Made by a program: the position numbers and the translations under genes. From Macrostomum lignano (Eukaryota): a DNA stretch of 64,000 nucleotides. Of the stretch, positions 19,775 through 47,232 are shown piece by piece. The stretch is from the NCBI GenBank assembly GCA_002269645.1, contig NIVC01003594.1, forward strand, positions 24,977-88,976, in the 5' to 3' direction. The notes under the pieces were generated by a model that was not told the DNA's origin, ran no database searches, and saw only the letters and a list, made by a program, of their open reading frames with translations. How positions within the stretch are numbered: position 1 is the stretch's first letter; every line of letters starts with the position of its first letter.

Positions 19775-22770
19775 AAATCATAGAAGCGTCATGTAAAAAA
19801 TCATAGAAGCGTCATGTAAACAATCATAGAAGCGTCATGTAAAAAATCATGGAAGCGTCATGAAAAAACCATAGGAGCGTCATGAAAAAATCATAGAAGC
19901 ATCATGTAAAAATCATAGAAGCGTCATGTAAACAATCATAGAAGCGTCATGTAAAAAATCGTGGAAGCGTCATGAAAATATCATAGAAGCGTCATGTAAA
20001 AAATCATAGAAGCGTCATGTAAACAATCATAGAAGCGTCATGTAAAAAATCATAGAAGCGTCATGTAAACAATCATAGAAGCGTCATGCAAAAAATCATA
20101 GAAGTGTCATGTAAAAAATCATGGAAGCGTCATGTAAAAATCATAGAAGTGTCATGAAAAAATCATGGAAGTGTCATGTAAAAAATCATGGAAGCGTCAT
20201 GAAAAAAAACCATGGAAGCGTCATGTAAAAAATCATAGAAGTGTCATGTAAAAAATCATGGAAGCGTCATGTAAAAAATCATAGAAGCGTCATGTAAAAA
20301 TCATAGAAGCGTCATGTAAACAATCATAGAAGCGTCATGTAAAAAATCATAGAAGCGTCATGTAAACAATCATAGAAGCGTCATGTAAAAAATCATAGAA
20401 GCGTCATGTAAACAATCATAGAAGCGTCATGCAAAAAATCATAGAAGTGTCATGTAAAAAATCATGGAAGCGTCATGTAAAAATCATAGAAGCGTCATGA
20501 AAAAATCATGGAAGCGTCATGTAAAAAATCATGGAAGCGTCATGAAAAAAAACCATGGAAGCGTCATGTAAAAAATCATAGAAGTGTCATGTAAAAAATC
20601 ATGGAAGCGTCATGTAAAAAATCATAGAAGCATCATGTAAAAATCATAGAAGCGTCATGTAAACAATCATAGAAGCGTCATGTAAAAAATCATGGAAGCG
20701 TCATGAAAGCGTCATGTAAACAATCATAGAAGCGTCATGCAAAAAATCATAGAAGTGTCATGTAAAAAATCATGAAAGCGTCATGTAAAAATCATAGAAG
20801 CGTCATGAAAAAATCATAGAAGCGTCATGAAAAAATCATAGAAGCGTCATGAAAAAAAACCATGGAAGCGTCATGTAAAAATCATAGAAGTGTCATGTAA
20901 AAAATCATGGAAGCGTCATGTAAAAAATCATAGAAGCGTCATGTAAAAATCATACAAGCGTCATGTAAAAAGCATAGAAGCGTCATGTAAAAAATCATAG
21001 AAGCGTCATGTAAACAATCATAGAAGCGTCATGTAAAAAATCATAGAAGCGTCATGTAAACAATCATAGAAGCGTCATGCAAAAAATCATAGAAGTGTCA
21101 TGTAAAAAATCATGGAAGCGTCATGTAAAAATCATAGAAGCGTCATGAAAAAATCATGGAAGCGTCATGTAAAAAATCATAGAAGCGTCATGAAAAAATC
21201 ATAGAAGCGTCATGAAAAAAAACCATGGAAGCGTCATGTAAAAATCATAGAAGTGTCTTGTAGAAAATCATGGAAGCGTCATGTAAAAAATCATAGAAGC
21301 ATCATGTAAAAATCATAGAAGCGTCATGTAAAAATCATAGAAGCGTCATGTAAAAAATCATGGAAGCATCATGTAAAAATCATAGTAGCGTCATGTAAAA
21401 AATCATAGAAGCGTCATGAAAAAATCATAGAAGCGTCATGAAAAAAACATAGGAGCGTCATGAAAAAATCATAGAAACGTCATGTAAAAATCATAGAAGC
21501 GTCATGTAAACAATCATAGAAGCGTCATGTAAAAAATCATAGAAGCGTCATGTAAACAATCATAGAAGCGTCATGTAAAAAATCATAGAAGCGTCATGTA
21601 AAAATCATAGAAGCGTCCTGCAGATATCGTAGAAGCGTCATGAAATAATCATAGAAGCGTCATGTAAAAAGCATAGAAGCGTCATGTAAAAAATCATAGA
21701 AGCGTCATGTAAACAATCATAGAAGCGTCATGTAAAAAATCATAGAAGCGTCATGTAAACAATCATAGAAGCGTCATGCAAAAAATCATAGAAGTGTCAT
21801 GTAAAAAATCATGGAAGCGTCATGTAAAAATCATAGAAGCGTCATGAAAAAATCATGGAAGCGTCATGTAAAAAATCATAGAAGCGTCATGAAAAAATCA
21901 TAGAAGCGTCATGAAAAAAAACCATGGAAGCGTCATGTAAAAATCATAGAAGTGTCATGTAAAAAATCATGGAAGCGTCATGTAAAAAATCATAGAAACG
22001 TCATGTAAAAATCATAGAAGTGTCATGTAAAAAGCATAGAAGCGTCATGTAAAAAATCATAGAAGCGTCATATAAACAATCATAGAATTGTCATGTAAAA
22101 AGCATAGAAGCGTCATGAAAAAAACATAGGAGCGTCATGAAAAAATCATAGAAACGTCATGTAAAAATCATAGAAGCGTCATGTAAAAATCATAGAAGCG
22201 TCATGTAAAAATCATAGAATCGTCATATAAAAAGCATAGAAGCGTCATGTAAACAATCATAGAAGCGTCATATAAAAAGCATAGAAGCGTCATATAAACA
22301 ATCACAGAAGCGTCATGAAAAAATCATGGAAGCGTCATGTAAAAATCATAGAAGTGTCATGTAAAAAATCATGGAAGCGTCATGAAAAAATCATAGAAGC
22401 GTCATGAAAAAATCATAGGAGCGTCATGAAAAAATCATAGAAGCATCATGTAAAAATCATAGAAGCGTCCTGCAAAAATCGTAGAAGCATCATGTAAACA
22501 ATCATAGAAGCGTCATGTAAACAATCATCGAAGCGTCATGAAATAATCATAGAAGCGTCATGTAAAAAGCATAGAAGCGTCATGTAAAAAGCAAAGAAGT
22601 GTCATGTAAAAAGCATAGAAGCGTCATGTAAACAATCATAGAAGCGTCATGAAAAAATCATAGAAGCCTCATTTAAAAACTAATGAAAGCGTCATTTAAA
22701 AAAATAAGCATCATGGAAGAATAAAAGAAGTGTAATGTAAAAATCAAAAGAAGCGTCATGTCAAACATTA
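19775..22770. repeat. About 3-kb minisatellite with a 21-23-bp unit (AAAAATCATAGAAGCGTCATGT) inside the Helitron
   Basis: More than 100 tandem units with higher-order variants. Confidence 0.97.
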
Positions 22771-23547
22771 AGGATGTCATGTAAAAATGAAATGCAGCTA
22801 TAATGCTGTGCTGGGAAGAAAAACTGAGACGTAAAGGCTCTCAGAGAATAACTGAGATTACGAGGGGGGGGGTTGTTTCTGGGATCTCAAAGCAAAAGTC
22901 AGAAGCTACTTCAAAGTTCATGTACTTTACTCAATTTTTTATTGCATTCTTTGTTGGCTCGCCATGGGGGGGTGCTGATAGAAGAAGAGTCATGTAAAAA
23001 ATAAAAGTAGCACTATGTATACATAAAAGACAAGTCATGTCGAAGTTAAAAGATTCATTTGGGAATTGGTACGATGTCAAAGCTTGGTGGAAATCGTTAT
23101 AGTGCTGTGATTCTTAAAGAAGGAATCACTAAAATGTCAAGGCTTAGGGGAGAAGAATTGCTGAGATTTCAAGGCTTTAGGTTGGGTTAAAGTTAGGTTT
23201 AAGTCAGGTGTGGGTTGAGGGTTATATTTTATCGGGTTTCAAGGTTAACAGTGGATTTTTTAGATTTCAAGGTTTATGGGGGCCATCGCTGACATGTCAA
23301 GGCTTACGGACGGGGGGGGGAATAGCTGAGATGTCAAGGCTCACGGGGGTATAAATGAGATTTCAAGGCTAAAGTCAGAAGCTACATGTAGTTTATTGAA
23401 AACTTTTTATTACATTATTTGATGCCTCCTCAGGCGAGGGATCGCTGATAAAAAAAGCGTTATGTAAAAAATAAAAGAAGCTTATCGCTATAATGCTGTA
23501 GTAGTGCTATAATGACTCTTAGAGAGAATTACTGAAATTTCAATGCT

Positions 23548-23592: not shown

Positions 23593-25726
23593 AAGGTTGA
23601 CAGATATTTTTAGATTTCCAAGGCTTATTGGGGGCATTGCTGAGATGTCAAGGGGGGAAGTTGATATGTTAAAGCTGGGGGGGGGGAATTACTGACATGT
23701 CAAGGCTTACAAGGTTTGACAGGAGATTTTTTAAGATTTCAAGGATACATGTAGCTTATTAAAAAAACGTGTAAAGCATTTCTTTGGCTCCCCAACGGGG
23801 GCGTAGATTGCTAGTAATGTCTCCTAATATCAGTCATCCTCTCACAGTGCTTATACAGCTTTTTTCCTCAGCTTGCTTTTTCCTTTAGCTGCTAGAATTA
23901 ATGTAATAGCCTACTTGACCTCTTAATGGTTTGCAAAATTCTTCTTTGAAAAGTTAGCCTTTAGACATTTGAATAGAAATCCATTGCACAAGTTGAAGTC
24001 TAGGCTATAGGGACCTTGCCTAGTCCCTAGATTTAATCAAAAGATCTAAAATAGCCTTATAAATGAGCAACTAGGCCTACACATTGTTTATCTATCATAA
24101 AATCTCATTCAATTGAATTAGATTTTATTAAAGAGTACATTAAAAGTCCCTAGTATGCTAGCTAAAATTTGATACTAAAGTACTAACTATTGACCTTAGT
24201 GTTTAATAAAGTTATGGAGATAGAGACTTGGATATTCTCTAGCCATAAATAGCACAATTTAGTCGAAATTGGCCTGGAATCTTTAGCTCTTAGCCAATAG
24301 TGATAGTCTCTTTTGTCATCTGACTCATCTAGGACTAGGTATAACCAGGTTTTATCCTTAACAACAATAACAAAAACCTAAATAGCAATTTAGGATATTA
24401 TCCAAGCTCATTGCTATTGAACATCTTCTAGATCTGCTTGGTGCAAGTGTCTTGTTGAAATTCTTTGTGATTTTTGTTAGTTACCATATTGGAATAACTG
24501 CTTGTATGATGTACAACCATCTGTCACACAAAGTTGTTAAATTTTTGGTGCCATACTGCATAACTGCAAAATTAGTTATATTTATATATAACATTCATTA
24601 TGTCAAAGCATAATGTTTATAAACCTATACCATATATCTGCAGGATCTGAAATTGTATTTCAATAGGTATTACTTACATATTACTAGTTATTAGTTACAT
24701 GGTGCAGCAAGGCAAAAAGTCCTTAAAAAGGCTTAAAAGCACAAAGTGATCTTCCTATTTCTTTATGGTGTCATTGGCTTTGTCATAGTGTAGCTTGTAT
24801 AGGCATCTGGTGCACTTAAGCCATAAACTTCAATAAAGGTAGAAATTTCTAGAATTACAATACAATGCATGCTACTACAGCAGCAGCCTCACATCCAGCA
24901 GGCCTCCGAGCAGCTCCAGACACTGGCTAGACCCCATCGGGGCTGGCCGCCAGTGCTGGACTGTCAGGCGTGGGGTGGAAGGTCCGTTGGCCACGGACAC
25001 GAAAGCTGGAATTCCGGCCCCTCTGCTGGGGTTGACCCTGGTGGACCTGGTGGCAGGCTCACCGACATGCCCTCTGCACACTCACGCGGCGACGCGGTGG
25101 TGCAAGGCCCCTGTCCTATGGTGAGCGGGGCATTGACGGCTGGCTGTGCCATGTTGCAGTCAGACCGTTCCCGTAGGCCCATTGACCAGGTGACCCAGCG
25201 GGGCCGGCATCAACAACAACAACAACTACAGCAGCAGTCCCTTTACCAAAGATAAAGTCCAAATAAGAAGAGAACTTTCACAAAATCCAAATGAATGATT
25301 AATGATTAATAAATGGTTTATTAATATTGGTACATACAGTCAGTCAGCCAGCCAGTCAGACTGCTCTAAGCAAAGGAGGGGTTCACTGGCTTTGAAGCCT
25401 TATCCCTGATTGAGCAGCACCTTGCCATTGCCACTGTCTTGCTCTCTCTATATAACAAATAAATTGTGCTTCTTCTCCTTGCCTTCTTAACTTAGACTTG
25501 CCCAGTATATGTGAGCTGCCAAACTGGTGAATGCAATGTGATCCAAACATACAACCTTTGTCATGCAGCCACCAAAAGATTCAATTTTAGTTTTGTCATC
25601 AATTTTTCCATTGACCAATGTTTTTGTTTTAATCTGGCTCGTTAATGTCTGAAATTGAAATTTAATTATGTTGATTAGATTCACAAATGTAGAAAGTTCT
25701 ATTTTTCACCTTGCAGATTGCTAAAA

Positions 25727-27520
25727 ATGGCAAATGCAGACGCAGACGAGGATTCTTTATCTGTGATCGAGCTGCTTACTTGCTCCATATGCAACTGTGT
25801 TGTATCCGATCCTAGGTTTCTTCCTTGCACTCACTCTGTGTGTCTCAGCTGTGTGGATTCTATCAGAAATACCATAGACTGGTGCACTGGCAGCTGTGCT
25901 GTCTGCCAGCACAAACTTCAACTGCCTTTTAGTTCGTCTCAGCTAGGTCGCGATCTCGCCAAATCTCAGCTGGCCAAAACAGTTAAGATCAATAAAAAGA
26001 ACAGACAGCCCCTCTGCTCAGCTCCTGACTGCCAGAATGCGTGGAAGGCCGTGTCAGCCTTGTCGAGCCGAGCCATGTGCGAGCAGCATCTGCAGGCGGA
26101 GCTGGACCGGCTGGCTGCAGAGGTGGCCTCACTGAGAGAGCCGGTCGCGGCTGCACTGGCGCCAGCAAGCCGTCTCTCAGGAATTTGTGGTCGAGCGGCA
26201 GAGAAGAAGCAGAGTCTGGAGGCCACGCAGCGAGAGGTGGAGTCGAAGTTCGAGAGACTTCGAGAGCAGCTCGAGGACGCAGAGACGCTGGCGTTGAAGG
26301 CAGTTCGGATCGACATTGAGAGGAGCTCGAGCTGCAGTGAGAGTGCAGAGTCGATTCGAGCTCAGCTGGAGCAGTTTCAGAGTATGGGTGAGAGCTGGTC
26401 GGACTTGCAGACTGCAGGCAGTCAAGGTGCAGTGCAGCTGGTCGATGAGACGAAGAGAGCACTGCGTCAGCTTGAGCACCTTGACAACTCGTTTGCGACA
26501 GTCTCTGATGTAGTGAACTCTGCGTCTGAGAGTTTAGTTAGCAGCTTAAAGCCTGAATTAGAAAAATTGTCCGCTAAACTCGAGAATCTTGTTGATCGAA
26601 CGGTTTCGTGCCGGCGTGTCTTGTCGCTTGAAGAATCAAAGTCCGTTAAACTGCAGAGCACACCTGACTTTGTGACTCTGTTATCGGACTGCAAGTTGAT
26701 TTTGGACAAAAATTCGTGTTTCCGTGCTATCCCCGAGAAGGGTAAAATTCCTGCTGGAGCTGTGGAAATTCGTGGCTCAGTTTTGTGTTTTCTATATCGA
26801 ACAATAGAAGCTGAGCCAACGGTGCAGTTGTTTTCATTTCCGAGTTGTGACATTATTTTAGGAGGATGTTTCAAGATTCCGTGTTACGATCAGAGGGGCT
26901 ATCCGATTTTTAAAAAATTTGAAGTGGAAGCGTTTCTTGGTGTTTCTTCAAAGAGCGTTTTTATTTTAGCTATCGTGGATCGGATTGTTAGTTTTTCTAT
27001 CGGAGGCGAGTTCTTAAAACGCATCCGAACTAAGAATTCGTCATTGTGGTCATTTTGTTCCAAGTCAGAGCTGCTGATCATTTTTTCACCAGATCATGGC
27101 ATTGGCTTGTATGATTCGGAGCTGCAGATTATGAAATTCATTTCCGTTTCGGATTTGTCGTGTCCTTCGGTCTTGTCAATGTGCCCGCAGTTTATCCTGG
27201 CAGACTTGGGTGATGGGCAGGTGTCAAGAATCGACGTTAGCAACCGCAGCGTGACCACACTGGCACAGTGCAAGCACCTGAGAGCTCAACTTCAACGCGC
27301 CAGTGTTATTTGTGAGGCTGAAAGCAAAATGTGCTTTGTACGCGGTGCAAAGTCAATCTTTGTGATGAACGAACAATTTGGTTTAGTTGAAACACTGAAA
27401 ATAAAACCTGCGCTACCAGGCGGCTTCTTCAAGGTCCGCATCTCAAACATGGATTATCTTGTCGTGTGCAGCGCTGCCGGAAAGTCCGTTGACTTTATCT
27501 CAATTAATAACTATGAGTAG
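25727..27520 (+). CDS. TRIM-like protein A (597 aa, intronless): C3HC4 RING, degenerate B-box, coiled coil, beta-rich C-terminal domain
   Basis: RING CSIC..CTHSVCLSC..CAVC; CSAPDC..CEQH; heptad-rich segment; uninterrupted ORF. Confidence 0.88.
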   Translation: MANADADEDSLSVIELLTCSICNCVVSDPRFLPCTHSVCLSCVDSIRNTIDWCTGSCAVCQHKLQLPFSSSQLGRDLAKSQLAKTVKINKKNRQPLCSAPDCQNAWKAVSALSSRAMCEQHLQAELDRLAAEVASLREPVAAALAPASRLSGICGRAAEKKQSLEATQREVESKFERLREQLEDAETLALKAVRIDIERSSSCSESAESIRAQLEQFQSMGESWSDLQTAGSQGAVQLVDETKRALRQLEHLDNSFATVSDVVNSASESLVSSLKPELEKLSAKLENLVDRTVSCRRVLSLEESKSVKLQSTPDFVTLLSDCKLILDKNSCFRAIPEKGKIPAGAVEIRGSVLCFLYRTIEAEPTVQLFSFPSCDIILGGCFKIPCYDQRGYPIFKKFEVEAFLGVSSKSVFILAIVDRIVSFSIGGEFLKRIRTKNSSLWSFCSKSELLIIFSPDHGIGLYDSELQIMKFISVSDLSCPSVLSMCPQFILADLGDGQVSRIDVSNRSVTTLAQCKHLRAQLQRASVICEAESKMCFVRGAKSIFVMNEQFGLVETLKIKPALPGGFFKVRISNMDYLVVCSAAGKSVDFISINNYE

Positions 27521-28165
27521 TGCGCTGTAGAATCAGCTTACTTTTGATGCTTATAAAATGTTTTGGTGCTTTTTATATGGTGTTTCATTGCACTGTCTGC
27601 TATTCTTAACGACCATAAAACTCGATCCATAAGTGGTAGGGTGGGGTTTCTTCCTAATGGACACATTCATTTCTGAACACAACAGTTGCTGTACAATTTG
27701 CTTGCTCTTAAGAGTGTCCTCTGATTTTAAAACTAATTCTAATTAAACTGTACGTGTTAGAAATATGAAGCATTAAGCTGAGACTGGTCTCGGTTTAAGC
27801 TTAGCTTAAGCCACATTTCGATCGAACTGGGGTGGGTGATGGAGGGACCATATTTACATAGCTTTTTCGTCTCATTAGTTGCCTGAACTGGCCCCGAGAT
27901 TTGCAGTCTATCTGGGGTAGAACAGATTGTAACAAAATGTGGCTCACATATGCATGTCAATTGCCAAGGTTTTTTCTTCCACTGTTGTACTCAAGTTTTT
28001 CCTTCTTTTCTGAATCTCTGTGAAGATTTTTATTTATTTATAACTTGTATTTTTTTATAATTTATTTTTTCGTATCCCTACAGTGTCTTCTATTTTTGTA
28101 CTGGCTATTTTTGCTTTTTATGAGATTTGCGCAAATAACCCTAGAGTTTTTTCCTTCATAACCAA

Positions 28166-28985
28166 CATAGGCGTAGGAACGGGGGGAGCCAGTGGGGCCA
28201 TGGCCCCCACTTTTTAAAATGGGGGGGGGCAATAATGGTATCTGGCCCCTCCACATTTTTAATGTAAAATGTAGACTTTTTGCTTACTTTTGGTTTTTGC
28301 TGCTTTGGATGAATGCATTTTTCTGCAAGGGCGACAAAACATAGCGCCTGCAGCGCTAAAATGAGTGCCTGCAGCGCTTTATAAAATGAGTGCTGACAAG
28401 ATGGGTTCCGAAAATAATCGGTACATGATAATGTGCATTTTCCATATAAAAAATCTAACTCGACGGGGCGTGCGCCCCCCCCCCTTCTAAATCCGTCACT
28501 GAACCTGCCCCCCCCCTTTAAATCCGTCACTGAACCTGCCCCCCCCCCTAAATCCGTCACTGAACCTGCCCCCCCCCTAAATCCGTCACTGAACCTGCCC
28601 CCCCCCCTAAATCCGTCACTGAACCTGCCCCCCCCCTAAATCCGTCACTGAACCTGCCCCCCCCTAAATCCGTCACTGAACCTGCCCCCCCCCTAAATCC
28701 GTCACTGAACCTGCCCCCCCCTAAATCCGTCACTGAACCTGCCCCCCCCCTAAATCCGTCACTGAACCTGCCCCCCCCCCCCCCCTAAATCCGTCACTGA
28801 ACCTGCCCCCCCCTAAATCCGTCACTGAACCTGCCCCCCCCCTAAATCCGTCACTGAACCTGCCCCCCCCCTAAATCCGTCACTGAACCTGCCCCCCCCC
28901 CCTAAATCCGTCACTGAACCTGCCCCCCCCTAAATCCGTCACTGAACCTGCCCCCCCCACTTTTTGAAACGTTCCTACGCCTATG
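28166..28985. mobile_element. Non-autonomous TIR element (hAT or P type) with an internal minisatellite of about 28 bp
   Basis: Perfect 16-bp TIR CATAGGCGTAGGAACG. 8-bp TSD ATAACCAA/TTAACCAA. The (C)nTAAATCCGTCACTGAACCTG array spans 28485-28960. Absent from paralogous TRIM flanks. Confidence 0.82.
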
Positions 28986-29254
28986 TTAACCAAGATTGTT
29001 CTGTATATCAGCCACAAATTTTTAATTTGGTATTATCTAGCATTTAATGAATACACAGGATTATTAATACATTTGCGCCTGTAAATTTTTAGCGATTTTA
29101 GCGTAATTTATTATTAATTTTGTTGTTGAACCGCGCCGTATTTGTGTGATTTCCTATGCTTTTACAGACAGGTTTACAAGTTATATTTTAGTTTTGTTAT
29201 CCAGCAAATATTCGTTAAAGGTCTTTGTCTTTGCTATTCCAGAAAACTTGGCAC

Positions 29255-29761
29255 CATAGATCTTATCTACACTAGATAGGCCACTCAGTAGCACCCAGCC
29301 AAACCATTGAATCTATAGGAAGCTTTCCAAGAAGCGGTATTTTCATCTAATTCTCAGTAGTTAGTGCGCATATTTGTCAGTAGCTGAAACGAGAATTAAA
29401 TGCTTTGTTTATTCAGCTGTGTCAGCGAAGACTTGAAATGCCATTGCATGAATACTGTGAGATTATAATCAGCAGAGTGCGTTTTCAGAGAAAGAAATCG
29501 TCTATGCATTTCTTCTGGGTCAGAAGGCTGTTGGAAAGCAGTGTAGATTTTAAAGAAAACTGAAAGAAGTTGGCGTAAAAAATTACTTTGCGTCATTTTA
29601 TTGCGATTAAATATATTTTTTCGGCCATGTCCATAGGCTACTGACAATTTGTTTTCAGCAGTGCAAGTGAACATGTTATCGTCCACGAGTCATTGTTGGG
29701 TGTCATTTTCTACACATTGACTGGATGGGGAGTGGCCTATCTAGTGTATATGAAATCTATT
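29255..29761. mobile_element. 507-bp TIR element (P or hAT type)
   Basis: 32-bp TIR with 4 mismatches (core TACACTAGATAGGCCACTC). 8-bp TSD CTTGGCAC/CTTAGCAC. Empty sites near 33590 and 35380. Confidence 0.78.
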
Positions 29762-30876
29762 CTTAGCACTAAAAACCCTAGAAGTGACCAATAGATAAAT
29801 ATAATTGGACGATGTGTTGTTAAGTCTGAAACCATTTCGCTGTGAATTCTTTCTAATGTTGACTTTTGCATTAAGGATGCCGCCTTAAAACATATTTATT
29901 CGATAGTTACATACGAGCGTATGTGTTAGAACACTATAAAGCCAGTTACCCCAGTATAATTTGCACTTTTCAATGATAAAATTGGCTGCCCTAGACAAGT
30001 AAAGTCCCAACTATGTTTTCCCGCAACTTTTCTTTTGACAATTTTTACTTTATATTTATAAATTTTATAACTCGAAAAAAAACTTTATAAAATGTTTGAA
30101 AAATTCCATTTTTGATATTAGTTTCACTGTTAATTTTTATTTTAAGACCCGTCAATATTTCGTTTAGCCTCTGTTGCACAACACAACAACAACAACAAAA
30201 TACGCTGTCATGATGGTAAAAGTCAGCGTCACACAGCACACAGCAAGTTCAATTTTAGTTATAAGTTAGTTTCAAACGGGAGTACCAAGTTTGCTTGTTG
30301 AATGGGTTCAGCTTCCGCTACACTCAACAAGCAGCTTGTCGAAGTTTCTTGCCGACTACAAAGGGGGTATCTTGTGGCCACAGATTCGTAGTTTATGAGG
30401 CTCGCAGGAGCAAGTTATTGGGTGAAGTGCTTTGCGGTAAAATAAGATGGCATCAGTAAATAAAATTGATGCTCTCTGTCGCCTATCGGTATCAGCGTTG
30501 CCATTCTCAACGACTCAATATGAATTCTAATTTAGCGTCAACGGCAAAGCAACGTTAAAAGTGCGTGGGAAACATTAAAAATAAGCAGGCACCCTATATG
30601 TATAGAAATATCCGTAGTGTTGTGGAATCTGTGTAACATACACTAGCAAACTTTAACAGGCAAGCTTCATACACCTTTTTTTGAAAATGTCTACTTAAGA
30701 TTTTTTCAAAACACAGCTGCGGTTTTAAGACAAGTTTTGCGGCTCTCAATTTAATAAATAATTTGCCAGAAGCTTATCTATTAAAGACGATAGGTTAATA
30801 ACTAGTCAGTGTCATTCTGTCAATCTTATATCCAAAGAGTTCAATCTTATCATATATTAATTACTTCATGCCAGCC

Positions 30877-32682
30877 ATGGCCACCGCCTCAGCAGACGCT
30901 TCAGGCGACAGTGCTCAGTCTGTGGAGCAGCTACTCACCTGCTCTGCGTGCTGCCGCATGGTCTCCGATCCCAGACTGTTGCCATGCTCACACTCTGTGT
31001 GTCTCAGCTGTGTGGACTCGCTCAGAGAAGCCACAGACCGGTGCACAGGCAGCTGCCCTGTCTGCCAGCAGAAAATTCAGCTGCCGAATAATTCTTCTGA
31101 GCTGAAGCGCGACATCACGAAGTGTCAGTTTGCCAAAGCGTTGAATATCACAGAGAAGAGCAGAGAGCTCTGCTCAGCTCCTGACTGCCAGAATGCATAG
31201 AAGGCCGTGTCAGCCTTGTCGAGCCGAGCCATGTGCGAGCAGCATCTGCAGGCGGAGCTGGACCGGCTGGCTGCAGAGGCGGCCTCACTGAGAGAGCCGG
31301 TCGCGGCTGCACTGGCGCCAGCAAGCCGTCTCTCAGGAATTTGTAGTCGAGCGGCAGAGAAGAAGCAGAGTCTGGAGGCCACGCAGCGAGAGGTGGAGTC
31401 GAAGTTCGAGAGACTTCGAGAGCAGCTCGAGGACGCAGAGACGCTGGCGTTGAAGGCAGTTCGGATCGACATTGAGAGAAGCTCGAGCTGCAGCGAGAGT
31501 GCAGAGTCGATTCGAGCTCAGCTGGAGCAGTTTCAGAGTATGGGTGAGAGCTGGTCGGACTTGCAGACTGCAGGAAGTCAAGGTGCAGTGCAGCTGGTCG
31601 ATGAGACGAAGAGAGCACTGCGTCAGCTTGAGCACCTTGACGACTCGTTTGCGACAGTCTCTGATCGGATCGAATCAACGGCTAAAAAGTTTGTTGCAAA
31701 TCTAACTTTGGAAGTTGAGAAGTTATCCATTGAGCTGGAAAAACTGGTTGATCAAACGGTTTCGTGCCGACGTGTGTTGTCGTTGAAAAAATCAAAGTCC
31801 GTTAAACTGCAGAGCGCACCTCAGTTTGTGACTCTGTTATCGGACTGCAAGCTGATGTTGGACAAGAACTCGTGTTTCACTTTCATCCCCTTTAACGATA
31901 AAATTCCTGCTGGAGCTGTAGCAATTCGTGGTTCGGTTTTGTGTTATCTATTTCAAACACAGTATTCTGAGCCAACTATGCACTTGTTTTCATTTCCTGG
32001 TTGTGACCTTATTTTAGGAGGATTTTTCAAAATTCCTTATTGGCATCAGGACAGCGCGCTATGGTCAGAAGATCCTGATTACATAGTTAAAGCATGTTTC
32101 GGTGTTTCTTCAAGAAGCGTTTTTATTTTGGCTTTCTCAGAAGCGATCGCTAGTTATTATGTCGGAGGCAAGCTTTTAAAACGCATCCAAACTAACCATT
32201 CGTCAATGTGGTCATTTTGTTCGAAGTCAGAGCAGCTACTCGTTTTTTCACGAAATCATGGCATGAGCTTGTATAATTCGGAGCTGCAGATTATGAAATT
32301 AATTCCGGTTTCGAATTTGTCGTGTCCTTCCGTATTGTCAATGTGCCCGCAGTTCATCCTGGCAGACTTGGGTGATGGACAGGTGTCAAGAATTGAGGTT
32401 AGCACCCGCAGCGTGACCATACTGGCACAGTGGAAACACCTGAGAGCTCAACTTCAAGGCGCCAGTGTTATTTGTGAAGCTAAAAGCAAATTGTGCTTTG
32501 TACGCGTTGAAAAGTCAATCTTTGTAATGAACGAACAATTTGATTTAGTTGAAACGCTGGAAATAAGAAATGTACGATCAGGCGGCTTCTTCAAGGTCCG
32601 CATCTCAAACGTGGATTATCTTGTCCTGTGCAGTGCTGCCGAAAAGTCCGTTGACTTTATCTCAATTAATAACTATGAGTAG
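30877..32682 (+). pseudogene. TRIM-like paralogue B with an in-frame TAG at 31198-31200
   Basis: Colinear with paralogue A. GCG TGG in A reads GCA TAG here; the frame is otherwise intact to 32682. Confidence 0.8.
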
Positions 32683-34070
32683 TGAGTAGTTTGCGGTAGG
32701 ATAACCTTGTTTTTCTGCTTACAAATGTGTTTTGGCGTTTCATTGCACTGTCTGCTATTCTCAACGACCATATAGAAGTGGACAAGTCACAGGAAAAAGT
32801 CGATCGATAAGTGGTAGATGGGGCTTCTTCCTATTGGACGCATTGGTTTCTGAACTAACAGTTCTGTTTAATTTACTTGCCTTTGCTTTTAAGGGTTTCG
32901 TATGGTTCTAAAACTAATTTGAATTAAAATGGACCTTTTAAAAAATGAAGCATAAAGCCGACACTGTCCTCGGCTTAAGCCCAGCTTATGCCAAATATCG
33001 ATCGAACTGAGGTGGGTGAAGGAGAGGCCATGTTCGCATAGCTTTTTGTCTCATTTCTTGACTGCAGTCTTCTCTGGAGTAGAGCATATTGTAACAAAAT
33101 GTGGCTCAATGTGCATACCAATTGCCAATGTTCATTTTCTTCCACTGTTTTACTCAAGTTTTTCCTTCCTTTTCCGAATCTTTGAAAGGGAAGTTTTTCA
33201 TTTATCCATAAGTTTTTGCAAATTTTTATATTTCCATTCTTTAGTGTCCTTACAGGCTTACAGTCAGTTCGATTTTTATACTATTTTTTGCTTTTTATAA
33301 GCATTGTGCAAATAATCCTTACAATTTGACTTCCATTTTCAATTGCGTTTTTTCTTACTTGACCAATATTGTATCTGTATATCTGCTACAAGTTTTAATT
33401 TTTTGTCTGATAATTATTACTTTTATTACCTGTCAATTTTAGCCATTTAAGCGTCATTTTTGTTGATTTTGTTGTTGAAACGCCCCATTTTGGAGTGATT
33501 TCCTATGCTTTTTCAAAAGCATTTACAAGTCATTTTAGTTGTGTTATCCAGCAAATATTCGTTAAAAGTCTTTGTCTTTGCTATGCTAAGAAACTTGGCA
33601 TTAGAAACTCCAGACTAGAAGTGACCGATGAGTTCGAGACTCGACGATGTGTTATTAACTCCGAGACCATGTTATTTTCTATATTTTGCGTTGGCAAAGT
33701 TCCAGTAGTTATAAGCTAGTTTCTAACGGGAGTACCACGTTTGCTTGCTGAGGCTTGCTTGTTGTATGTGTACAGCCTCCGCTACATTCAACAGACGGCT
33801 TGTCAAAGTTTTCTTACCGATTACTATGGGGATATCTTATGACCACGGATACCTAGTTTATAAGGCTTACAGGAGCTAATTATTGGGTGAAGTGCTATGC
33901 GGTATAAAAGGGTTGCATGAATGCATAAAATTGATGGACTCTTCCGCCTATTGGCGTTGCCATTCTTGACAAATCAGAGTAAATGCTAATTTAGCCGTCA
34001 ATCTTTCAGTTGATAAGAAGTGCATGGGAAACTTGATAATAAGCAGACACCCTGTAGGTATAGAAACGTC

Positions 34071-34286
34071 GTGTTGTTTGTGAAGCTGAAAGCAAATTGT
34101 GTTTTATACGCGGTGCAAAGTCAATCTTTGTGATGAACGAACAATTCGAATTGGTTGAAACACTGGAAATAAAAACTGCGCTACCAGGCGGCTTCTTCAA
34201 GGTCCGCATCTCAAACATGGATTATCTTGTCGTGTGCAGAGCTGCCGGAAACTGTTGACTTTATCTCAATTAATAACTACGAGTAG
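34071..34286 (+). pseudogene. Truncated TRIM-like remnant (last ~70 codons only)
   Basis: Matches the 3' end of paralogues A and B (CEAESK...ISINNYE*) with a small deletion near the end, followed by the homologous downstream flank. Confidence 0.85.
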
Positions 34287-36394
34287 TGCGCTTTAAGATC
34301 AGCTTGCTTTCTGCTTCTAAAAATGTTTTGTTGTTTCACTGTCTGCTATATTCACAGAATTTATAGAAGTAGACTGATGAAGAGAGGAAAAACTCGATCG
34401 ATATGTGGTATGTGGGGCTTCTCTCTATTGGACGCAATCATTTCTAAGCAGAACATGGCTGTACAACTTGTTTGGTTATGTTTTTGATGGCGTCATCAGA
34501 TTCCTGAAACAAATTCTACTTTGGATCAGCTACTTAGAAATATAAATAAAAGTTATGGATTTTCATTCAAAGGCATAAAATGCATTATTATTCAGTCGTT
34601 TTATAACCTGTAGAAATCTTACAGATTCAAGATACGCTCGTAGTTGCTATGTGCATTGTGCACTGCTTTACGCTCGTATCTAAGCTCTGTTCCTGTCTAA
34701 AGAAATGATAATAGTAGGTTCAGGCTGTCCTCTGCTTATAGCTTAGCTTATAGCATACCAAAAATCGATTGATTTTTACACAGCTATTTTTTGTCGTCAT
34801 TTACTGGGACTGGTCATCACCGAGGTTTGCCGTCTTTTTCAGAGGTAGAACATATTGTAACAAACTGTGGTTCACAGATCCATACCAATTTGCTATTTGC
34901 CAGGTTTATTTTATCACATTGTAGTTGTCTAGTCTTTTCCAGTCTTTTCTGAAGCTCCGTAAAAGAGAACTTTTTATTAATCCAATAATTTATTCTTATA
35001 TAATTACATTTTGTGTGAAAAATGTTACTATTTTTGGTACGGTGTGCTTTGTTTACCGGTAGAGCTTTGTGCAATAAATAAAAAAGTTTTTTTTTTCCTT
35101 TTTTCAGTAGAACTTTTTCCTACTTAACCACAATATATTTTTTACTATATCTGCCTCATTTAAAATTTGTTTTAATCAGATAATTAATACACTGGCTGAA
35201 TTATACTATTGTACTTGTTATTGTAGTTTTTATGAGATTATTTATTGTTTTTTTTTTGTTACACCGCCGTATTTGTGTGATTAACTAGATTTCTTCAAAA
35301 CAAACCACGAGTCATATTTAAGCTTTGTTATCCAGAAAATATTTGTTAAAGGTCTTTGTCTTTGCTATGCCAAGAAACTGGGCACTAGAAACTCTGGAAG
35401 TGAGCCGGCATGGTAAAGAGGATTCGGCAATGAGTTGTTGAATCTGAAACCAAGTCGCTATGAATTTTGGTTATTCTGACTTTTACGTCATGACACTGAC
35501 TTGAAATGCATGTATAGGAGTAGCTACACACGAGGGTAGAATGCTATAAAATACTCGTGCTTGATAAACCAGGAACGTGTCTGAAAAATGGCCTTTTTCT
35601 TGACAGATAATATAATATACTCTTATACTTTGTATATAATATTCAATAATAAACCTTTTTCAATCTGCTTTTTATCAGATTTTCGATGTTATTTGTCAAT
35701 TTAACAGCCGTCAATATTTTATGTAGGCTCATAGTTTGAGTCAGCAAACAAGTTCAAGTATAGTATAACTTATTATAGTTTTAGCTTCAGTACACTACTT
35801 TTGCTTGCTGAAGTTTGCTTGAATGTGTCCAGCTTCCACTGCACTCAACAGGCAGCTTGTCAATATTTTCTTGCCGATTACTAAGGGAATGTCTTGTGGC
35901 CACAGTTTTGTAGTTTATGAGGCTCATGGGAGCTAGTTATTGGGTGAAGTGCTATGCAGTATTTTTAGTGGTCTCTCTGTCACCTATTGGCGTTGCCATT
36001 TTTGACGAATCAAAATTGAATGCAAATTTCTGATAAATTGCGCATGCGCTACTTTATCGCCAGCAACAAAGCAACGGCTTTCAATGCTTCAGTAGGTAAG
36101 ATTAGCAATCTGCGCCCCCTCCGTTTGTGATTGATATGGGCAGTAATGTCTCAACGGTTGTGTGAGTAGGCTACTTCATCCAGAATACGTAGCTTACTCA
36201 CAGGTAATTGAAAAGATCCCAAATCATATGGGATTTAGTATGCAGGAAGAATAGCATCTGTAGGGCGTAAATGAGTGCCTTTCATTAGCCATGAGGCTGT
36301 GTTTTGTGAAGTAGGACTTACAAACCTGTGCTTTTTATTCACTCCAAATCGTACTATTTTTTGTTTAACTAATAAACCTTTCAGCAAACTGGCC

Positions 36395-38212
36395 ATGGCA
36401 ACCTCGGAGAAGACGAACAACAAAGATGACTTACCGTCAGCTGAGCAGCTGCTGAACTGCTCCGTGTGTCACCGCATGGTCTCCGATCCCAGGCTGTTGC
36501 CATGCTCACACTCTGTGTGTCTCCGCTGTGTGGACTCAGTCAGAGATCCCACGGACAGGCGCACTGGAAGCTGCCCTGTCTGTCAGGCAAAACTTGAGCT
36601 GCCGCAGAACTCAAATCAGCTCCATCGAGACGTCATGAAGTTACGATTAGCGGAAAGTGTCAAGGCCTCCGTAGTCAGTACGAAGCCATGCACTCATTCT
36701 GACTGCAAGAAAATGTCAAAAAGCGTGTCAGCCTTGTCGAGCCGAGCCATGTGCGAGCAGCATCTGCAGGCGGAGCTGGACCGGCTGGCTGCAGAGGCGG
36801 CCTCACTGAGAGAGCCGGTCGCGGCTGCACTGGCGCCAGCAAGCCGTCTCTCAGGAATTTGTGGTCGAGCGGCAGAGAAGAAGCAGAGTCTGGAGGCCAC
36901 GCAGCGAGAGGTGGAGTCAAAGTTCAAGAGACTTCGAGAGCAGCTCGAGGACGCAGAGACGCTGGCGTTGAAGGCAGTTCGGATCGACATTGAGAGGAGC
37001 TCGAGCTGCAGTGAGAGTGCAGAGTCGATTCGAGCTCAGCTGGAGCAGTTTCAGAGTATGGGTGAGAGCTGGTCGGACTTGCAGACTGCAGGCAGTCAAG
37101 GTGCAGTGCAGCTGGTCGATGAGACGAAGAGAGCACTGCGTCAGCTTGAGCACCTTGACGACTCGTTTGCGACAGTCTCTGATGTAGTGAAGTCAACAGT
37201 TCAGGCCAGTGTGGAGAGTTTGAAGGCCAGCAATGAAAAACTATGCAGTGAATTGGAGGTTCTTCTTGATCGGAAAGTTTCAGGTGGCTCGGTGTTATCG
37301 CTTAAAGATTCAAAGCCTGTTGGATTTGAGTTCGCTCCTCTCTTTGTAGTCTGCTTGTCGGGTGTGAAGCTCATGTTGGACTCAAATTTGTATGTCTGTA
37401 AACTGAATGGCAGCCTTCCAACTGGCGCTACTACGCTACCAAAGTCGATCATGTTTGTCATCTTCAAACGGTCGAATTATTTCGATTCCAAGCAAGAATT
37501 TCAACTATTTTCGCTTCCTAATTGCATCCCAATTTTCGGAGCGCGATTTGCCTTGCAGTTTCCGAATTCGTATTACTCTCGTACTGAAACGATTGAAGCC
37601 ATTTTTGGCGCTTCTTCTGGGTGTTTTGTTGTCGCTATTTATGGAAAACTCTTCACTGCAGATGCCAGTGGAAAATTGATAAAGTCCGTTGGCATAGAGG
37701 ATAGCAAACTGTGGCACTTTTCTCCGGAATCAGACCAGCTTACGGTTTCTCACTCAAGCTGTGGTGTCCAGTATGTCTCTGTGTTCAACATCAATCTGGA
37801 AAAAATTCGAACCGTAGTGATTTCTGCTTCTTCCATCTCGTCAGTGTTCGCCGTTGGGCCGAAATTCATGTTGGTAGACTTTGGCGACGGCAAGGTGTCG
37901 AGAGTTGATGTAGACAGTCGCAGCATCTCCGAGCTGGCTCAGCTCGACAGACTGGTTGGTCGACACCGTCGTACCACTGCAGAGCCTGGCGCCTTTGCGC
38001 TGTTCTTTGGCGCTGGCAATGCGGTATTTGTTGAAGGCAAGCATGCTGTGGCCGTGAACAAGAGCGGACAGGTGGTGCAAGCTCTGCAGCTGAAGAACAA
38101 GGTGTCGAGAACTGCAACTGTTGTTCGGATGGCGAACCAGTACTATCTGGTCATGCTCAGTGCATCCTGCAACTCCATGGAGCTTGTGTCAGTTGACCCG
38201 ACTTGCTTTTGA
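36395..38212 (+). CDS. TRIM-like paralogue D (605 aa, intronless)
   Basis: RING CSVC..CSHSVCLRC..CPVC, a shared coiled-coil block and a divergent beta-rich C-terminus. ATG at 36395 follows a TTTCAG acceptor-like site. Confidence 0.88.
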   Translation: MATSEKTNNKDDLPSAEQLLNCSVCHRMVSDPRLLPCSHSVCLRCVDSVRDPTDRRTGSCPVCQAKLELPQNSNQLHRDVMKLRLAESVKASVVSTKPCTHSDCKKMSKSVSALSSRAMCEQHLQAELDRLAAEAASLREPVAAALAPASRLSGICGRAAEKKQSLEATQREVESKFKRLREQLEDAETLALKAVRIDIERSSSCSESAESIRAQLEQFQSMGESWSDLQTAGSQGAVQLVDETKRALRQLEHLDDSFATVSDVVKSTVQASVESLKASNEKLCSELEVLLDRKVSGGSVLSLKDSKPVGFEFAPLFVVCLSGVKLMLDSNLYVCKLNGSLPTGATTLPKSIMFVIFKRSNYFDSKQEFQLFSLPNCIPIFGARFALQFPNSYYSRTETIEAIFGASSGCFVVAIYGKLFTADASGKLIKSVGIEDSKLWHFSPESDQLTVSHSSCGVQYVSVFNINLEKIRTVVISASSISSVFAVGPKFMLVDFGDGKVSRVDVDSRSISELAQLDRLVGRHRRTTAEPGAFALFFGAGNAVFVEGKHAVAVNKSGQVVQALQLKNKVSRTATVVRMANQYYLVMLSASCNSMELVSVDPTCF

Positions 38213-39388
38213 GGTCTTTATTTTATTGTGTCGGAGACTTTTTGGATGCAAATGATCCTTATCTAGTTTAATGAAATTTCGCATCTTTGTTCGAATTCAC
38301 GGTTTCACCTTTGATGACCTTTTCTTCTCAATGTTTACAGTTTTTTCAGCATTTTATTTAGTAGCTATCTGTAGTGGGATTTACGAAATTTTTGAGTAGC
38401 ATTTGGAATATGCAATACTTCATTAAATATACTCGTAGCTAGAATACTCGTGTTGAATATCTAATGTTTATTTTATGCAGGTACAAAACTTGAGTCTTCA
38501 ACGTACTCCTGAACCAAATAGCAATTAGATTTCGTTAATTTTGTGTAACCACAGAAAACGTATGTACCAGTATGTATTTCATTGGATTATTAATATTTTT
38601 GAGCAACAGTATTTACTGTAGCAATTATTAATGGTGGAGGTTTTTCAATTGCTGTATTTTTCTAAGAGCCAGCTCAAATGTATTTTTTCCGTTGCATTTG
38701 TTAATTACTATTTTCTATTTTCTACAACCGAACCAAGCCTTTAAACTATGTGTAATGTTTCTCTTGAAGTGCATTTTGCTTTTCTAAGCTCGGTGATTTT
38801 CGCAGTGCATTATTGCCTAATAATCTTGTTTACCAAATTTAACTGTTATGTACATTTAAAGTAGCAATAAACCGTTTCTACTCATTCAGTTTAATTTTGT
38901 TCTTTTATTGGTTATTTATTTCAGTATTTAAATTTGTCAAAAAGCGTTAATAACGTCATAAAATAGTTAAATGCATCATCATCCTTAGTGTAATATAAAG
39001 AACTATCACTTATGAAGATTTCATCTGTGAAAGTCACTGAGTCTTTCTTGTCTCTGATGAAACTGCACGTCTTTGCAACCGCTGTTTTTAAGTTCAACGC
39101 ATATAATTACTGTTTACTAAAAAGTCTGAATTTTGTTAGACTAGGTATAGGAAAAGCCAAGGTGCAAATCATGAGCAGACTGGTCGATAGATAAGGCCTA
39201 TACTTAGAAGTAAGCCTCAAGGTGTTTCGTTCTTTTTATGGCTATTCGTAAGTTCAATAAAATACTACTAATAGCAATCTTGCTTGAATGAGTTTTTAAA
39301 TAGGGCTTTTGTGCTTTCGCTTTACGAGCTATATGCATATTTTCATTGTCAACTCAACTTATTATTTTCAGCCGTCAGCTAGCCAGTC

Positions 39389-40397
39389 ATGTCCTTAGTC
39401 CCGTGGCGTTTCGACAGCCCCTACGCTGACGAGCGCAACAGTCCGGTGCGCAACTTCTGTCTGGCTGGCCATCGTCTGGCCATTGTGCAGGACTTGACTA
39501 GCGGACCCATCGGACCGGCTGAGGGCACCACAGGCAGGCGGCTGTGGAGTGCCGGATTCCTTCTGGTAATTTTGCAAGTGAAGGAGGCGGAGTGAGGTGG
39601 GTGTGCAAGTAAAGGAGGTGGAGTGAGGTGGGTGGGCAAGTAAAGGAGGTGGAGTGAGGTGGGTGTACAAGTAAAGGAGGTGGAGCGAGGTGGGTGTGCA
39701 AGTATAGGAGGCGGAGTGAGGTGGGTGTGCAAGGGACAGAGCGGAGTCGGAGTGAAGTGGGGCTTGCTAGTGACGTAATCAATGACGTAACCCTTAACTA
39801 TTGGACCATTTCCAGGCCAATTTGATCTCCAAATCAGCGGATTGCTTACCGGCCGAGCTTCGACGCTCTTTGTCCATCGGTCGCCAGCGTCAGCGCCAAG
39901 TGCTGGAGCTGGGCGCCGGCTGCGGCCTGCCATCGCTGGTGTGCGCCTGCCGCGGTGCCCAGGTGGTGGCCACCGACTCAGCCGACTCTCTGCCGCATCT
40001 CCGCCGGTCAATCGACGCCAATGCAAGTTTGCCTGACCAGACAAAGACCTCCATTGAAGTTGCCGCATTAGACTGGGCCAATCCAAACAAAGAGCTGCTA
40101 CTTGGCCGCGATTGGCTGGCTGTCATTGGCGCCGATTTGTTCTTTGATCCTGCCGCCTCGGCGGCTCTGTTTGACTTAACGCTGATGCCGCTGCTGCAGT
40201 CCCGACCGGGGCTTGTCTGCGCCTTTGTGTTCAAGCGGCGCGGCCTGGCCGGCGAGGCGGAGTTTCTCGACAGACTGCGGCAGGCGGCCGGTGATGGCCG
40301 GCTGGAGTGGAGCAGCGAAGAGCTGCAGCCAATGCCGGAGTTCGCGGATCCGAGCCAGCACCGTCTGGTGACTGTGCGGTCCAAGGGCTGCGGCTGA
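39389..40397 (+). CDS. METTL21-family (Methyltransf_16) protein-lysine methyltransferase; exons 39389-39565 and 39816-40397
   Basis: TTGRRLWSAG, VLELGAGCG (SAM motif I), ATD, LDW, GADLFF. Phase-0 GT-AG intron containing a repeat of about 31 bp. Confidence 0.87.
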
Positions 40398-46172: not shown

Positions 46173-46429
46173 TTAAATTCAGTTTCTAAAAGGGTTGCAG
46201 TTAATTTATCCTACTATGCTCGCGATTCGCATTGTAAAATAATAAAAAACTTTATTTGCGCGTAAATTATTAACGGCATTTAATATTTTCCGACCTGTTT
46301 GAATAAATGCTGATCCAATGCAGATTGGAGCTGAGCTGTGTGGCTCCTCATTCTGCGACTTTGGACCGTCTGGGCTTGTTCGAGGAAACTGCTGGAGTCT
46401 ATTGATTTTTTTCTGTGGATTAGCTGCTA

Positions 46430-46941: not shown

Positions 46942-46986
<45 letters not shown>

Positions 46987-47160: not shown

Positions 47161-47232
47161 CCAGTCGCACAGGATAGGGTAGATACTGCACTAAAAGCAG
47201 CCCAGCACTCGCACAAATTGCCCGGTTATTGC

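What the first reader, a model, noticed from the sequence alone, without database searches (positions are those of the whole stretch)
25727..38212. Mosaic TRIM cluster: homogenised coiled coil, diversified RING and C-terminal domain
Seen: a 467-nt block (26051-26517, about 31207-31665, 36725-37191) encoding the B-box end and coiled coil differs at only about 2-7 positions between paralogues, including synonymous sites. Immediately outside it the genes diverge abruptly: A and B differ at many C-terminal residues, and D is barely alignable. Known: TRIM coiled coils mediate dimerisation and C-terminal domains set target specificity, as in TRIM5 and fish finTRIMs. Inference: gene conversion or module swapping keeps a common dimerisation module so that paralogues can form mix-and-match heterodimers with variable recognition heads. 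This would be a candidate combinatorial innate-immune E3 system.
Basis: partly seen in the sequence, partly recalled or inferred. Interest (0 to 1): 0.8.

Follow-up and report, generated by a model that had tools for sequence, protein, structure and literature searches.

The report
Gene conversion homogenises flatworm RING-gene coiled coil
Three neighbouring flatworm (Macrostomum lignano) genes for TRIM-like ubiquitin-ligase proteins share a 460-base stretch kept almost identical by repeated copying between the genes. The rest of each gene is old and divergent, which is a well-known evolutionary pattern seen here in a new, species-restricted gene family.

Summary
Three single-exon genes, A (25727-27520), B (30868-32682, with an in-frame TAG) and D (36395-38212), share a 460-nt block with 4-6 differences per pair. 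Their flanks differ by 20-46% (P 5e-37 to 1e-115). Synonymous divergence is 0.01-0.04 in the block against 0.3-1.8 outside it.

The window is Macrostomum lignano contig NIVC01003594.1. Two further copies of the cluster on other contigs show the cause, which is regional ectopic gene conversion:
- Flanks group by orthology (410 informative sites to 2), but the block groups by locus.
- Two substitutions are fixed in all three paralogues of one contig and in no other copy.
- 30 of 66 site pairs in the block fail the four-gamete test.
- The block diverges between loci at the normal rate, so nucleotide-level constraint is excluded.
- In one locus, a B-type promoter, RING and block have been pasted onto the D-type C-terminus. 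This is real module swapping.

"TRIM" is only partly right. The RING is TRIM2/3-like, but no B-box is detectable. The C-terminal domain is an orphan, probably a β-propeller.

Heterodimerisation and an immune role are untested. The family is tiny, and flank dN/dS is 0.24-0.63. This is a new member of a known kind, comparable to regional conversion in protocadherin clusters.

The parts
25727..27520 (+). Gene A: intact single-exon ORF (597 aa) with a C3HC4 RING, a Cys/His linker, helical coiled-coil region and an all-beta C-terminal domain
   Evidence: ORF; RING hits; helices 100-293 and strands 352-593 in a low-confidence model; ortholog L1A is 96-99% identical in every segment
26050..26509 (+). 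Homogenised block in A (codons about 109-261). A and D remain identical to 26517. A-B identity already starts at 26012
   Evidence: dS 0.009-0.028 against the other copies
30868..32682 (+). Gene B: same architecture, with an in-frame TAG at 31198-31200 (TGG in A and in the orthologs L1B and L2BD). Otherwise the frame is open, so this is a very recent pseudogene, a null allele or a base error
31206..31665 (+). Homogenised block in B
34071..34445 (+). Fragment C: remnant of the last about 218 coding nt plus 3' flank of an A/B-type gene (92.7% identical to A, 88.5% to B). It is also present in the sister locus, so it predates the split of the loci
   Evidence: (D4, D12)
36395..38212 (+). Gene D: intact single-exon ORF (605 aa from ATG 36395) with its own RING type and its own C-terminal domain type
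   Evidence: ortholog L1D is 98.8% identical over the whole gene
36724..37183 (+). Homogenised block in D
28479..28958 (.). 29-nt minisatellite (about 16 copies) in the A-B spacer. It is part of the roughly 5.2-5.5 kb tandem duplication units, which also share spacer repeats
   Evidence: (D1, D8-D10, D13)

Best explanation
This is a tandem cluster of three Macrostomum-specific genes (plus one remnant). Each encodes a RING E3-ligase-type protein with a long helical (coiled-coil) middle and an orphan, probably beta-propeller, C-terminal domain.

The paralogues are old. However, a 460-nt stretch encoding most of the helical region is continually overwritten between neighbouring copies by ectopic (interlocus) gene conversion in short patches. 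This happens independently in each of the three genomic copies of the cluster carried by this polyploid species.

Conversion is probably confined to the block because only there is identity high enough for heteroduplex formation, which makes the process self-reinforcing. Converted RING or propeller sequence is also probably removed by purifying selection. Both of these steps are inferred.

Occasionally a tract runs further. In one locus, the upstream region, RING and block of the B-type gene replaced those of the D-type gene, creating a new RING/propeller combination.

A consequence is that all paralogues carry a practically identical helical module and could therefore co-assemble. This is inferred, not shown.
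For: - Block versus flank difference: P 5e-37 to 1e-115.
- dS is 0.009-0.037 in the block and 0.3-1.8 in the flanks.
- Orthologous pairs between loci (wA-L1A, wB-L1B, wD-L2BD) have block dS 0.023-0.047. That lies within the range of their flanks (0.014-0.085, excluding the replaced RING of L2BD), so the block does not evolve slowly. It is homogenised within loci.
- Quartet wA, wB, L1A, L1B: 410 flank sites support orthology against 2 for the locus grouping and 2 for the third topology. In the block, 3:0:0 support grouping by locus.
- Positions 26290 and 26344 are fixed in all three paralogues of contig NIVC01000390.1 and absent from the five other copies. No such site exists in the flanks.
- A 3-nt deletion plus TCA at 26420-26426 is shared by L1D, L2X and L2BD across gene types.
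- 30 of 66 informative site pairs fail the four-gamete test within 460 nt.
- The chimeric intact gene L2BD has a RING 97% identical to B and 98.4% to L2X, and a C-terminus 99% identical to D. The D-type RING is present in the two other loci, so L2BD is derived.
- GC3 is 0.65 in the block and 0.44-0.51 in the C-terminal part, as expected under biased conversion. The same signature was used for protocadherins (PMC1852091).
- Architecture: RING hits, best solved relatives TRIM2, TRIM3 and RNF135, and a propeller-like C-terminus.
Against: - Only one assembly of one inbred line was available. It was polished with Pilon using multi-mapping Illumina and RNA-seq reads (PMC5730564), which could have erased or moved a few SNPs, so exact difference counts are soft.
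- The locus-grouping signal in the block rests on few sites (2-3 per comparison).
- The elevated GC is also seen at codon positions 1 and 2 (0.57), so it partly reflects amino-acid composition.
- Why the tract edges are so sharp between A and B, whose C-terminal flank is still 82% identical, is not explained by homology limits alone.
- Both structure models are of low confidence (pLDDT 40.6 and 48.7). The fold calls are therefore tentative.
- There is no expression or protein data.
Confidence: 0.82

Rival explanations
1. Selection, not merely mechanics, keeps one common dimerisation module so that A, B and D form mix-and-match heteromers with different RING and recognition heads. The cluster would then be a combinatorial, possibly immune, E3 system. 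Conversion would be the means and heteromerisation the selected end.
For: - The helical module is 97% or more identical at the protein level in all copies, so any homomeric interface is equally available to heteromers.
- Both flanks are under purifying selection, which means they are functional and distinct.
- The tract edges are sharp even for A-B, where flank identity (82%) would still allow longer tracts.
- A new RING/propeller combination survives as an intact ORF in L002.
Against: - There are no interaction, expression or infection data.
- There are only three genes per locus. One has a stop codon, and the B-type copy in L002 is frameshifted and truncated.
- Differences inside the block include replacements at roughly neutral ratios (dN/dS 0.15-0.96 on 4-6 differences). 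That fits drift between conversions.
- About 30 residues of the predicted helix lie outside the block and are divergent.
- Flank dN/dS is 0.24-0.63 overall, with no arms-race signature.
- There is no B30.2/SPRY domain and no family expansion.
Confidence: 0.2
2. The block is conserved by constraint at the nucleotide level. Candidates are an embedded structured RNA, a small-RNA target or an antisense gene, since long antisense ORFs of 100-176 aa lie in the block.
For: Antisense ORFs at 25966-26316, 25989-26462 and 26177-26479, and their equivalents in B. Synonymous sites are conserved between paralogues.
Against: - Between loci the block diverges as fast as its flanks (dS 0.023-0.047).
- Substitutions are shared by locus, not by gene.
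- There is no Rfam match.
- Open antisense frames are expected in GAG/CAG/CTG-rich, GC-rich helical coding sequence.
Confidence: 0.03
3. Assembly or polishing artefact. The block identity comes from collapse of reads, or from Pilon polishing with multi-mapped short reads.
For: The assembly was polished with Illumina and RNA-seq reads, and the genome is highly redundant (PMC5730564).
Against: - Eight copies on three contigs each keep private differences and locus-specific shared differences.
- Flanks that are 30-50% divergent lie within a few hundred bases, well inside single PacBio reads.
- Polishing cannot turn roughly 50% identity into 99%, and it cannot create locus-specific fixed sites.
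Confidence: 0.03
4. The block is a shared splice junction region. Transcripts starting at A are really spliced into B or D, as in the deposited gene models. The cluster would then work like a variable/constant-exon locus.
For: NCBI model BOX15_Mlig027094g1 (P0001) joins the A N-terminus and block to the B C-terminus, spanning 25718-32682. In the sister contig, a 601-aa model runs from the A' start to the D'' end.
Against: - Each gene is a complete uninterrupted ORF containing its own block.
- The join lies inside identical sequence that contains an AG|GT. Any spliced aligner fed a de novo transcript that hopped across a 460-nt identical stretch would therefore produce such a model.
- The annotation used a de novo transcriptome mapped with BLAT (PMC5730564).
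Confidence: 0.05

Closest known systems
Regional (domain-restricted) gene conversion in clustered protocadherin genes of teleosts and mammals (PMC1852091; Noonan et al. 2004 as cited there)
   Same: Tandem paralogues in which one part of the coding sequence is over 99% identical, including synonymous sites. The specificity-determining part stays divergent, GC3 is raised in the homogenised part, and homogenisation is lineage- or locus-specific.
   Different: The protein family is different (RING E3-like rather than cadherin). The cluster is very small, with three genes. The homogenised part lies in the middle of the gene, with divergent sequence on both sides. There is no shared constant exon.
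TRIM/RBCC E3 ligases, especially the TRIM-NHL class (TRIM2/TRIM3) and the B-box-less relative RNF135/Riplet
   Same: An N-terminal C3HC4 RING whose best solved relatives are TRIM2, TRIM3, RNF135 and TRIM5. It is followed by a long helical region and a C-terminal putative beta-propeller, the same order as RING, coiled coil and NHL propeller.
   Different: No B-box is detectable. Only a C-x4-C...C-x2-H remnant is present. The C-terminal domain matches no NHL, WD40 or SPRY model and has no sequence relatives outside M. lignano.
Tandem antiviral TRIM clusters (primate TRIM5/6/22/34 and young chromosome-11 TRIMs, fish finTRIMs)
   Same: Tandemly duplicated RING/coiled-coil genes with partial gene conversion between paralogues and a breakpoint near the RING/B-box boundary (PMC3228819).
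   Different: In those clusters the variable B30.2 domain shows positive selection and the families are expanded. Here flank dN/dS is 0.24-0.63, there is no B30.2 and there is no expansion.

Membership tests
TRIM / RBCC family | N-terminal C3HC4 RING finger | tested here: met
   Pfam zf-C3HC4 scores 27.9 bits (B) and 26.1 bits (D) against a cut-off of 21; A scores 18.4 bits, below the cut-off. All eight ligands are visible in the sequence. Best PDB matches are the TRIM2 and TRIM3 RINGs, E 5e-8.
TRIM / RBCC family | One or two B-box zinc fingers between the RING and the coiled coil | tested here: not met
   No zf-B_box hit for whole proteins at E<=1 or for the isolated linker at E<=10. The linker holds only C-x4-C-x16-C-x2-H, which gives four possible ligands.
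TRIM / RBCC family | Coiled coil of about 100-150 residues after the zinc fingers | tested here: inconclusive
   AlphaFold predicts helices at 100-200, 207-219, 225-229 and 233-293, but pLDDT is below 60. Weak hits to several coiled-coil families appear. No dedicated coiled-coil predictor or oligomer model was available.
TRIM-NHL subclass | C-terminal six-bladed NHL-repeat beta-propeller | tested here: not met
   No NHL (or WD40, SPRY or filamin) Pfam hit at E<=10. A generic propeller-like fold is only suggested. The evidence is a weak WD40 sequence hit at E 1e-3 and Foldseek top hits that are all propellers at TM about 0.3 on a pLDDT 48.7 model.
Concerted evolution by regional gene conversion | Local collapse of synonymous divergence between paralogues relative to the flanks | tested here: met
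   dS 0.009-0.037 against 0.3-1.8; binomial P <= 5e-37.
Concerted evolution by regional gene conversion | Phylogenetic incongruence: the converted segment groups by locus while the flanks group by orthology | tested here: met
   Quartet counts are 410 for orthology in the flanks, against 2 for each alternative topology, and 3:0:0 for the locus grouping in the block. Two sites are fixed across all three paralogues of one contig only.
Concerted evolution by regional gene conversion | Mosaic of tracts (recombination within the segment) | tested here: met
   30 of 66 informative site pairs fail the four-gamete test. Tract ends differ between copies.
Concerted evolution by regional gene conversion | Raised GC3 in the converted segment (GC-biased conversion) | tested here: inconclusive
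   GC3 is 0.65 against 0.44-0.51 in the C-terminal part. However, GC12 is also raised (0.57), and the RINGs of B and D have GC3 0.63-0.68.
Immune-type expanded TRIM arsenals (TRIM5-like, finTRIM-like) | Large lineage-specific expansion with a positively selected recognition domain | tested here: not met
   Only four protein clusters were found in 5.8 billion sequences and two representatives in 1.84 billion. Segment-wide dN/dS is 0.24-0.63, and only some A-B propeller windows reach about 1.

The most novel reading that the evidence does not exclude
The block is actively maintained as a universal oligomerisation cassette and recombination joint. It would let the flatworm both co-assemble A, B and D into heteromeric E3 ligases and reshuffle RING and propeller modules between genes and subgenomes, as seen in the B-RING/D-propeller gene of contig NIVC01000257.1. 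This would be a small, evolvable, modular ligase system built around an orphan substrate-binding fold.
Probability: 0.15. Interest if true: 0.6.

Novelty: new member of a known kind. Interest (0 to 1): 0.3.

Why it matters
It is a clean, well-bounded example of domain-restricted concerted evolution. Three naturally replicated copies of the same cluster in one neopolyploid genome allow conversion to be separated from constraint without needing other species.

It also has practical consequences for M. lignano genomics. The identical block has produced chimeric gene models in the public annotation. It will also mis-assign short reads, RNAi probes and expression counts among these paralogues.

The proteins combine a TRIM-like RING with an orphan C-terminal domain restricted, as far as the databases show, to this species. 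If heteromerisation were shown, the cluster would be a compact model for how modular E3 ligases evolve.

Tried and rejected
- Pfam on whole proteins and on isolated linker and C-terminal pieces found only RING matches.
- Exhaustive HMMER with a C-terminal-domain profile against 1.84 billion representatives found only the species' own copies, a spurious bacterial repeat protein (P0005) and a weak cyanobacterial WD40 protein (P0006).
- Two word-indexed searches of 5.8 billion proteins returned only the same four M. lignano clusters.
- AlphaFold on the full-length protein and on the C-terminal domain gave low confidence (pLDDT 40.6 and 48.7). The Foldseek result, all propellers at TM about 0.3, is therefore only a hint.
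- Rfam on 24000-40000 gave no match.
- A literature search for the locus tags found nothing.
- The 603-aa ORF at 46318-48129 was suspected to be a further family member. It was rejected because it is a translation of (TGTC)n and related microsatellites.
- The antisense ORFs in the block were considered as genes and rejected as a composition effect.
- An unequal-crossover deletion was considered for L2BD and rejected. D's own distal upstream region is still present upstream of the pasted B-type segment, so the event was a replacement.
Full report
**What is in the window**

The region 25.7-38.2 kb holds three head-to-tail, apparently intronless ORFs on the + strand:
- A: 25727-27520, 597 aa.
- B: 30868-32682, open except for one in-frame TAG at 31198-31200.
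- D: 36395-38212, 605 aa.

A 3' remnant of a fourth copy ('C') lies at 34071-34445. The duplication units of roughly 5.2-5.5 kb also share spacer repeats. The surrounding sequence is extremely rich in minisatellites.

**Check of the observation**

A three-way alignment shows a block with only 10 variable columns. It lies at A 26050-26509, B 31206-31665 and D 36724-37183. Pairwise differences are 4-6 in 460 nt. Identity drops within a few bases at both ends.
- RING part: 59-71% identity between paralogues.
- C-terminal part: 82% for A-B and 52% for A/B-D.
- Against the coding flanks, the deficit of differences has binomial P of 5e-37 (A-B), 1e-115 (A-D) and 9e-106 (B-D).
- Nei-Gojobori dS is 0.009-0.037 in the block. 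It is 0.81-1.66 in the RING part and 0.30 or about 1.8 in the C-terminal part. A sliding window shows the same trough.

**Origin and sister loci**

The proteins match only Macrostomum lignano entries. The window is contig NIVC01003594.1 of assembly Mlig_3_7, GCA_002269645.1. This flatworm is a neopolyploid with three subgenomes (PMC10733133).

I fetched two further copies of the cluster:
- NIVC01000390.1 (L001 plus L004). It is colinear with the window and holds A', an intact B', the C' remnant and D''.
- NIVC01000257.1 (L002). It is followed by the same Methyltransf_16 and DEAD-box helicase neighbours as the window.

**Why this is gene conversion and not constraint or artefact**

1. Orthologous pairs between loci have the same low divergence in all segments. 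Block dS is 0.023-0.047, while their flanks range from 0.014 to 0.085. The block does not evolve slowly. It is similar only among neighbours.
2. For the quartet wA, wB, L1A, L1B, 410 flank sites support the orthology grouping. Two flank sites support the locus grouping and two the third topology. The three informative block sites all support the locus grouping.
3. With eight copies, positions 26290 and 26344 are fixed in all three paralogues of NIVC01000390.1 and in none of the other five. No such site occurs among the 804 flank columns that are identical in the window's three genes.
4. Other variants are shared in patches across gene types. For example, the 3-nt deletion plus TCA at 26420-26426 occurs in L1D, L2X and L2BD, and the changes at 26245/26252 occur in wD and L2X. 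In total, 30 of 66 informative site pairs fail the four-gamete test. Many short tracts have therefore been exchanged.
5. Tract ends differ between copies by 10-40 nt.
6. GC3 is 0.65 in the block against 0.44-0.51 in the C-terminal part. This is the signature used for regional conversion in protocadherin clusters (PMC1852091). GC at codon positions 1 and 2 is raised as well, so this point is only suggestive.

Pilon polishing with multi-mapped reads (PMC5730564) may have blurred a few SNPs. It cannot create the block or the locus-specific pattern. No Rfam family matches.

**Module swapping**

In L002, the gene next to the methyltransferase (L2BD, 9338-11149) is an intact 604-aa ORF.
- Its upstream region and RING are B-type. 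The RING is 97.2% identical to wB and 98.4% to its neighbour L2X.
- Its C-terminal domain and 3' flank are D-type, 99% identical to wD.
- The D-type RING is present in the window and in NIVC01000390.1, so L2BD is derived.
- D's distal upstream sequence is still present in L002 upstream of the pasted segment. The event was therefore a replacement of about 1.1 kb ending at the 3' edge of the block, not a deletion.

L2X itself is a decayed B-type copy. It has a frameshift in the RING, and only about 56 recognisable residues follow the block.

Older mosaicism is also visible. The 5' half of B's RING is closer to D, while its 3' half and linker are closer to A. The A-B C-terminal domains (dS 0.30) are younger than the A-B RINGs (dS 0.81).

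**What the proteins are**

- The RING is a complete C3HC4 finger. Its best solved relatives are TRIM2, TRIM3, RNF135 and TRIM5.
- No B-box is detectable, even at E<=10 on the isolated linker.
- The block encodes residues of about 109-261, within predicted long helices at 100-293 (low confidence).
- The 336-342-aa C-terminal domain has no Pfam match.
- Beyond M. lignano's own proteins, its only sequence matches are one spurious repeat-protein hit and weak WD40 hits (E 9e-4 in 1.84 billion representatives; E 1e-3 in the PDB).
- The C-terminal model is all-beta, with pLDDT 48.7. All 50 best Foldseek matches are beta-propellers, but TM is only about 0.3.

I therefore call these proteins TRIM-like, with the order RING, coiled coil, putative propeller and no B-box. 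I do not file them as TRIM family members.

**Function**

Flank dN/dS of 0.24-0.63 shows that the RING and C-terminal domains are functional and under purifying selection. Only some A-B windows in the propeller reach pN >= pS.

Nothing here bears on immunity. The family comprises only these loci. In the window, B has a stop codon.

That the shared helical module allows heteromers is a reasonable inference from its 97% or greater protein identity, but it is untested. The divergent roughly 30 helical residues after the block might restrict partner choice.

**Annotation artefact**

The deposited model BOX15_Mlig027094g1 (P0001) joins the A N-terminus and block to the B C-terminus across 25718-32682. 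A 601-aa model in the sister contig joins A' to D''. The join lies inside identical sequence, and the annotation used a de novo transcriptome mapped with BLAT. These models are therefore most likely artefacts of the block. Real cis-spliced chimeras are not excluded without full-length cDNA.

**Verdict**

The mechanism, regional ectopic gene conversion with occasional module replacement, is well supported.

The TRIM label is only partly right, and the heterodimer and immune reading is untested speculation. The pattern is a known kind, as in protocadherin clusters and primate TRIM clusters (PMC1852091, PMC3228819). Here it appears in a new, lineage-restricted family.

Noticed in passing
window 31198-31200: Gene B has an in-frame TAG where A, L1B and L2BD have TGG. 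The remaining 491 codons are open, so this is a very recent nonsense mutation, a null allele or a base error. It lies 6 nt upstream of the block, inside the extended A-B identity tract (26012-26049 in A).
   Followed up: partly
window 25718-32682 (L003 10001-16965); L001 9416 to L004 8506: Public gene models are chimeric. P0001 joins the A N-terminus and block to the B C-terminus, and a 601-aa model in the sister contig runs from A' to D''. They are probably caused by the identical block and will confound expression and RNAi work on these genes.
   Followed up: partly
L002 5474-6440 and 9030-11152: The third copy of the cluster is rearranged. It holds a decayed B-type gene (frameshift in the RING, C-terminus lost after about 56 residues) and a B-RING/D-propeller hybrid. 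No A-type gene lies within the roughly 5.5 kb of L002 upstream of L2X.
   Followed up: partly
window 34071-34445: A remnant of the 3' end and downstream flank of an A/B-type gene lies between B and D. It is conserved in the sister contig (L001 19303-19668).
   Followed up: partly
window 46318-48129: The longest other ORF in the window (603 aa) is a translation of (TGTC)n and 21/42-nt repeats (Cys/Leu/Ser-rich). It is not a gene of this family. In L002 and L004 a small RING-H2 (zf-rbx1) gene is annotated in the region syntenic to about 47.8-48.9 kb.
   Followed up: partly
window 1-64000, e.g. 19771-22787, 12107-13695, 28479-28958, 44368-44798, 45297-46173: The density of minisatellite arrays with 18-46-nt units is extraordinary (66 TRF rows at score >=150). 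One is a 3-kb array of 22-23-nt units. A 27-nt in-frame-length array lies where the DEAD-box helicase gene is annotated in the sister locus.
   Followed up: no
window 39544-39764 vs L002 12586-13279: The 31-nt repeat array just upstream of the Methyltransf_16 gene is about three times longer in the sister locus.
   Followed up: no
window 25700-25726 and 36375-36394: Polypyrimidine-AG acceptor-like sites (ttgcag, tttcag) lie 10-12 nt upstream of the ATGs of A and D. They may be spliced-leader trans-splice acceptors, which raises the possibility that the tandem genes are co-transcribed.
   Followed up: no
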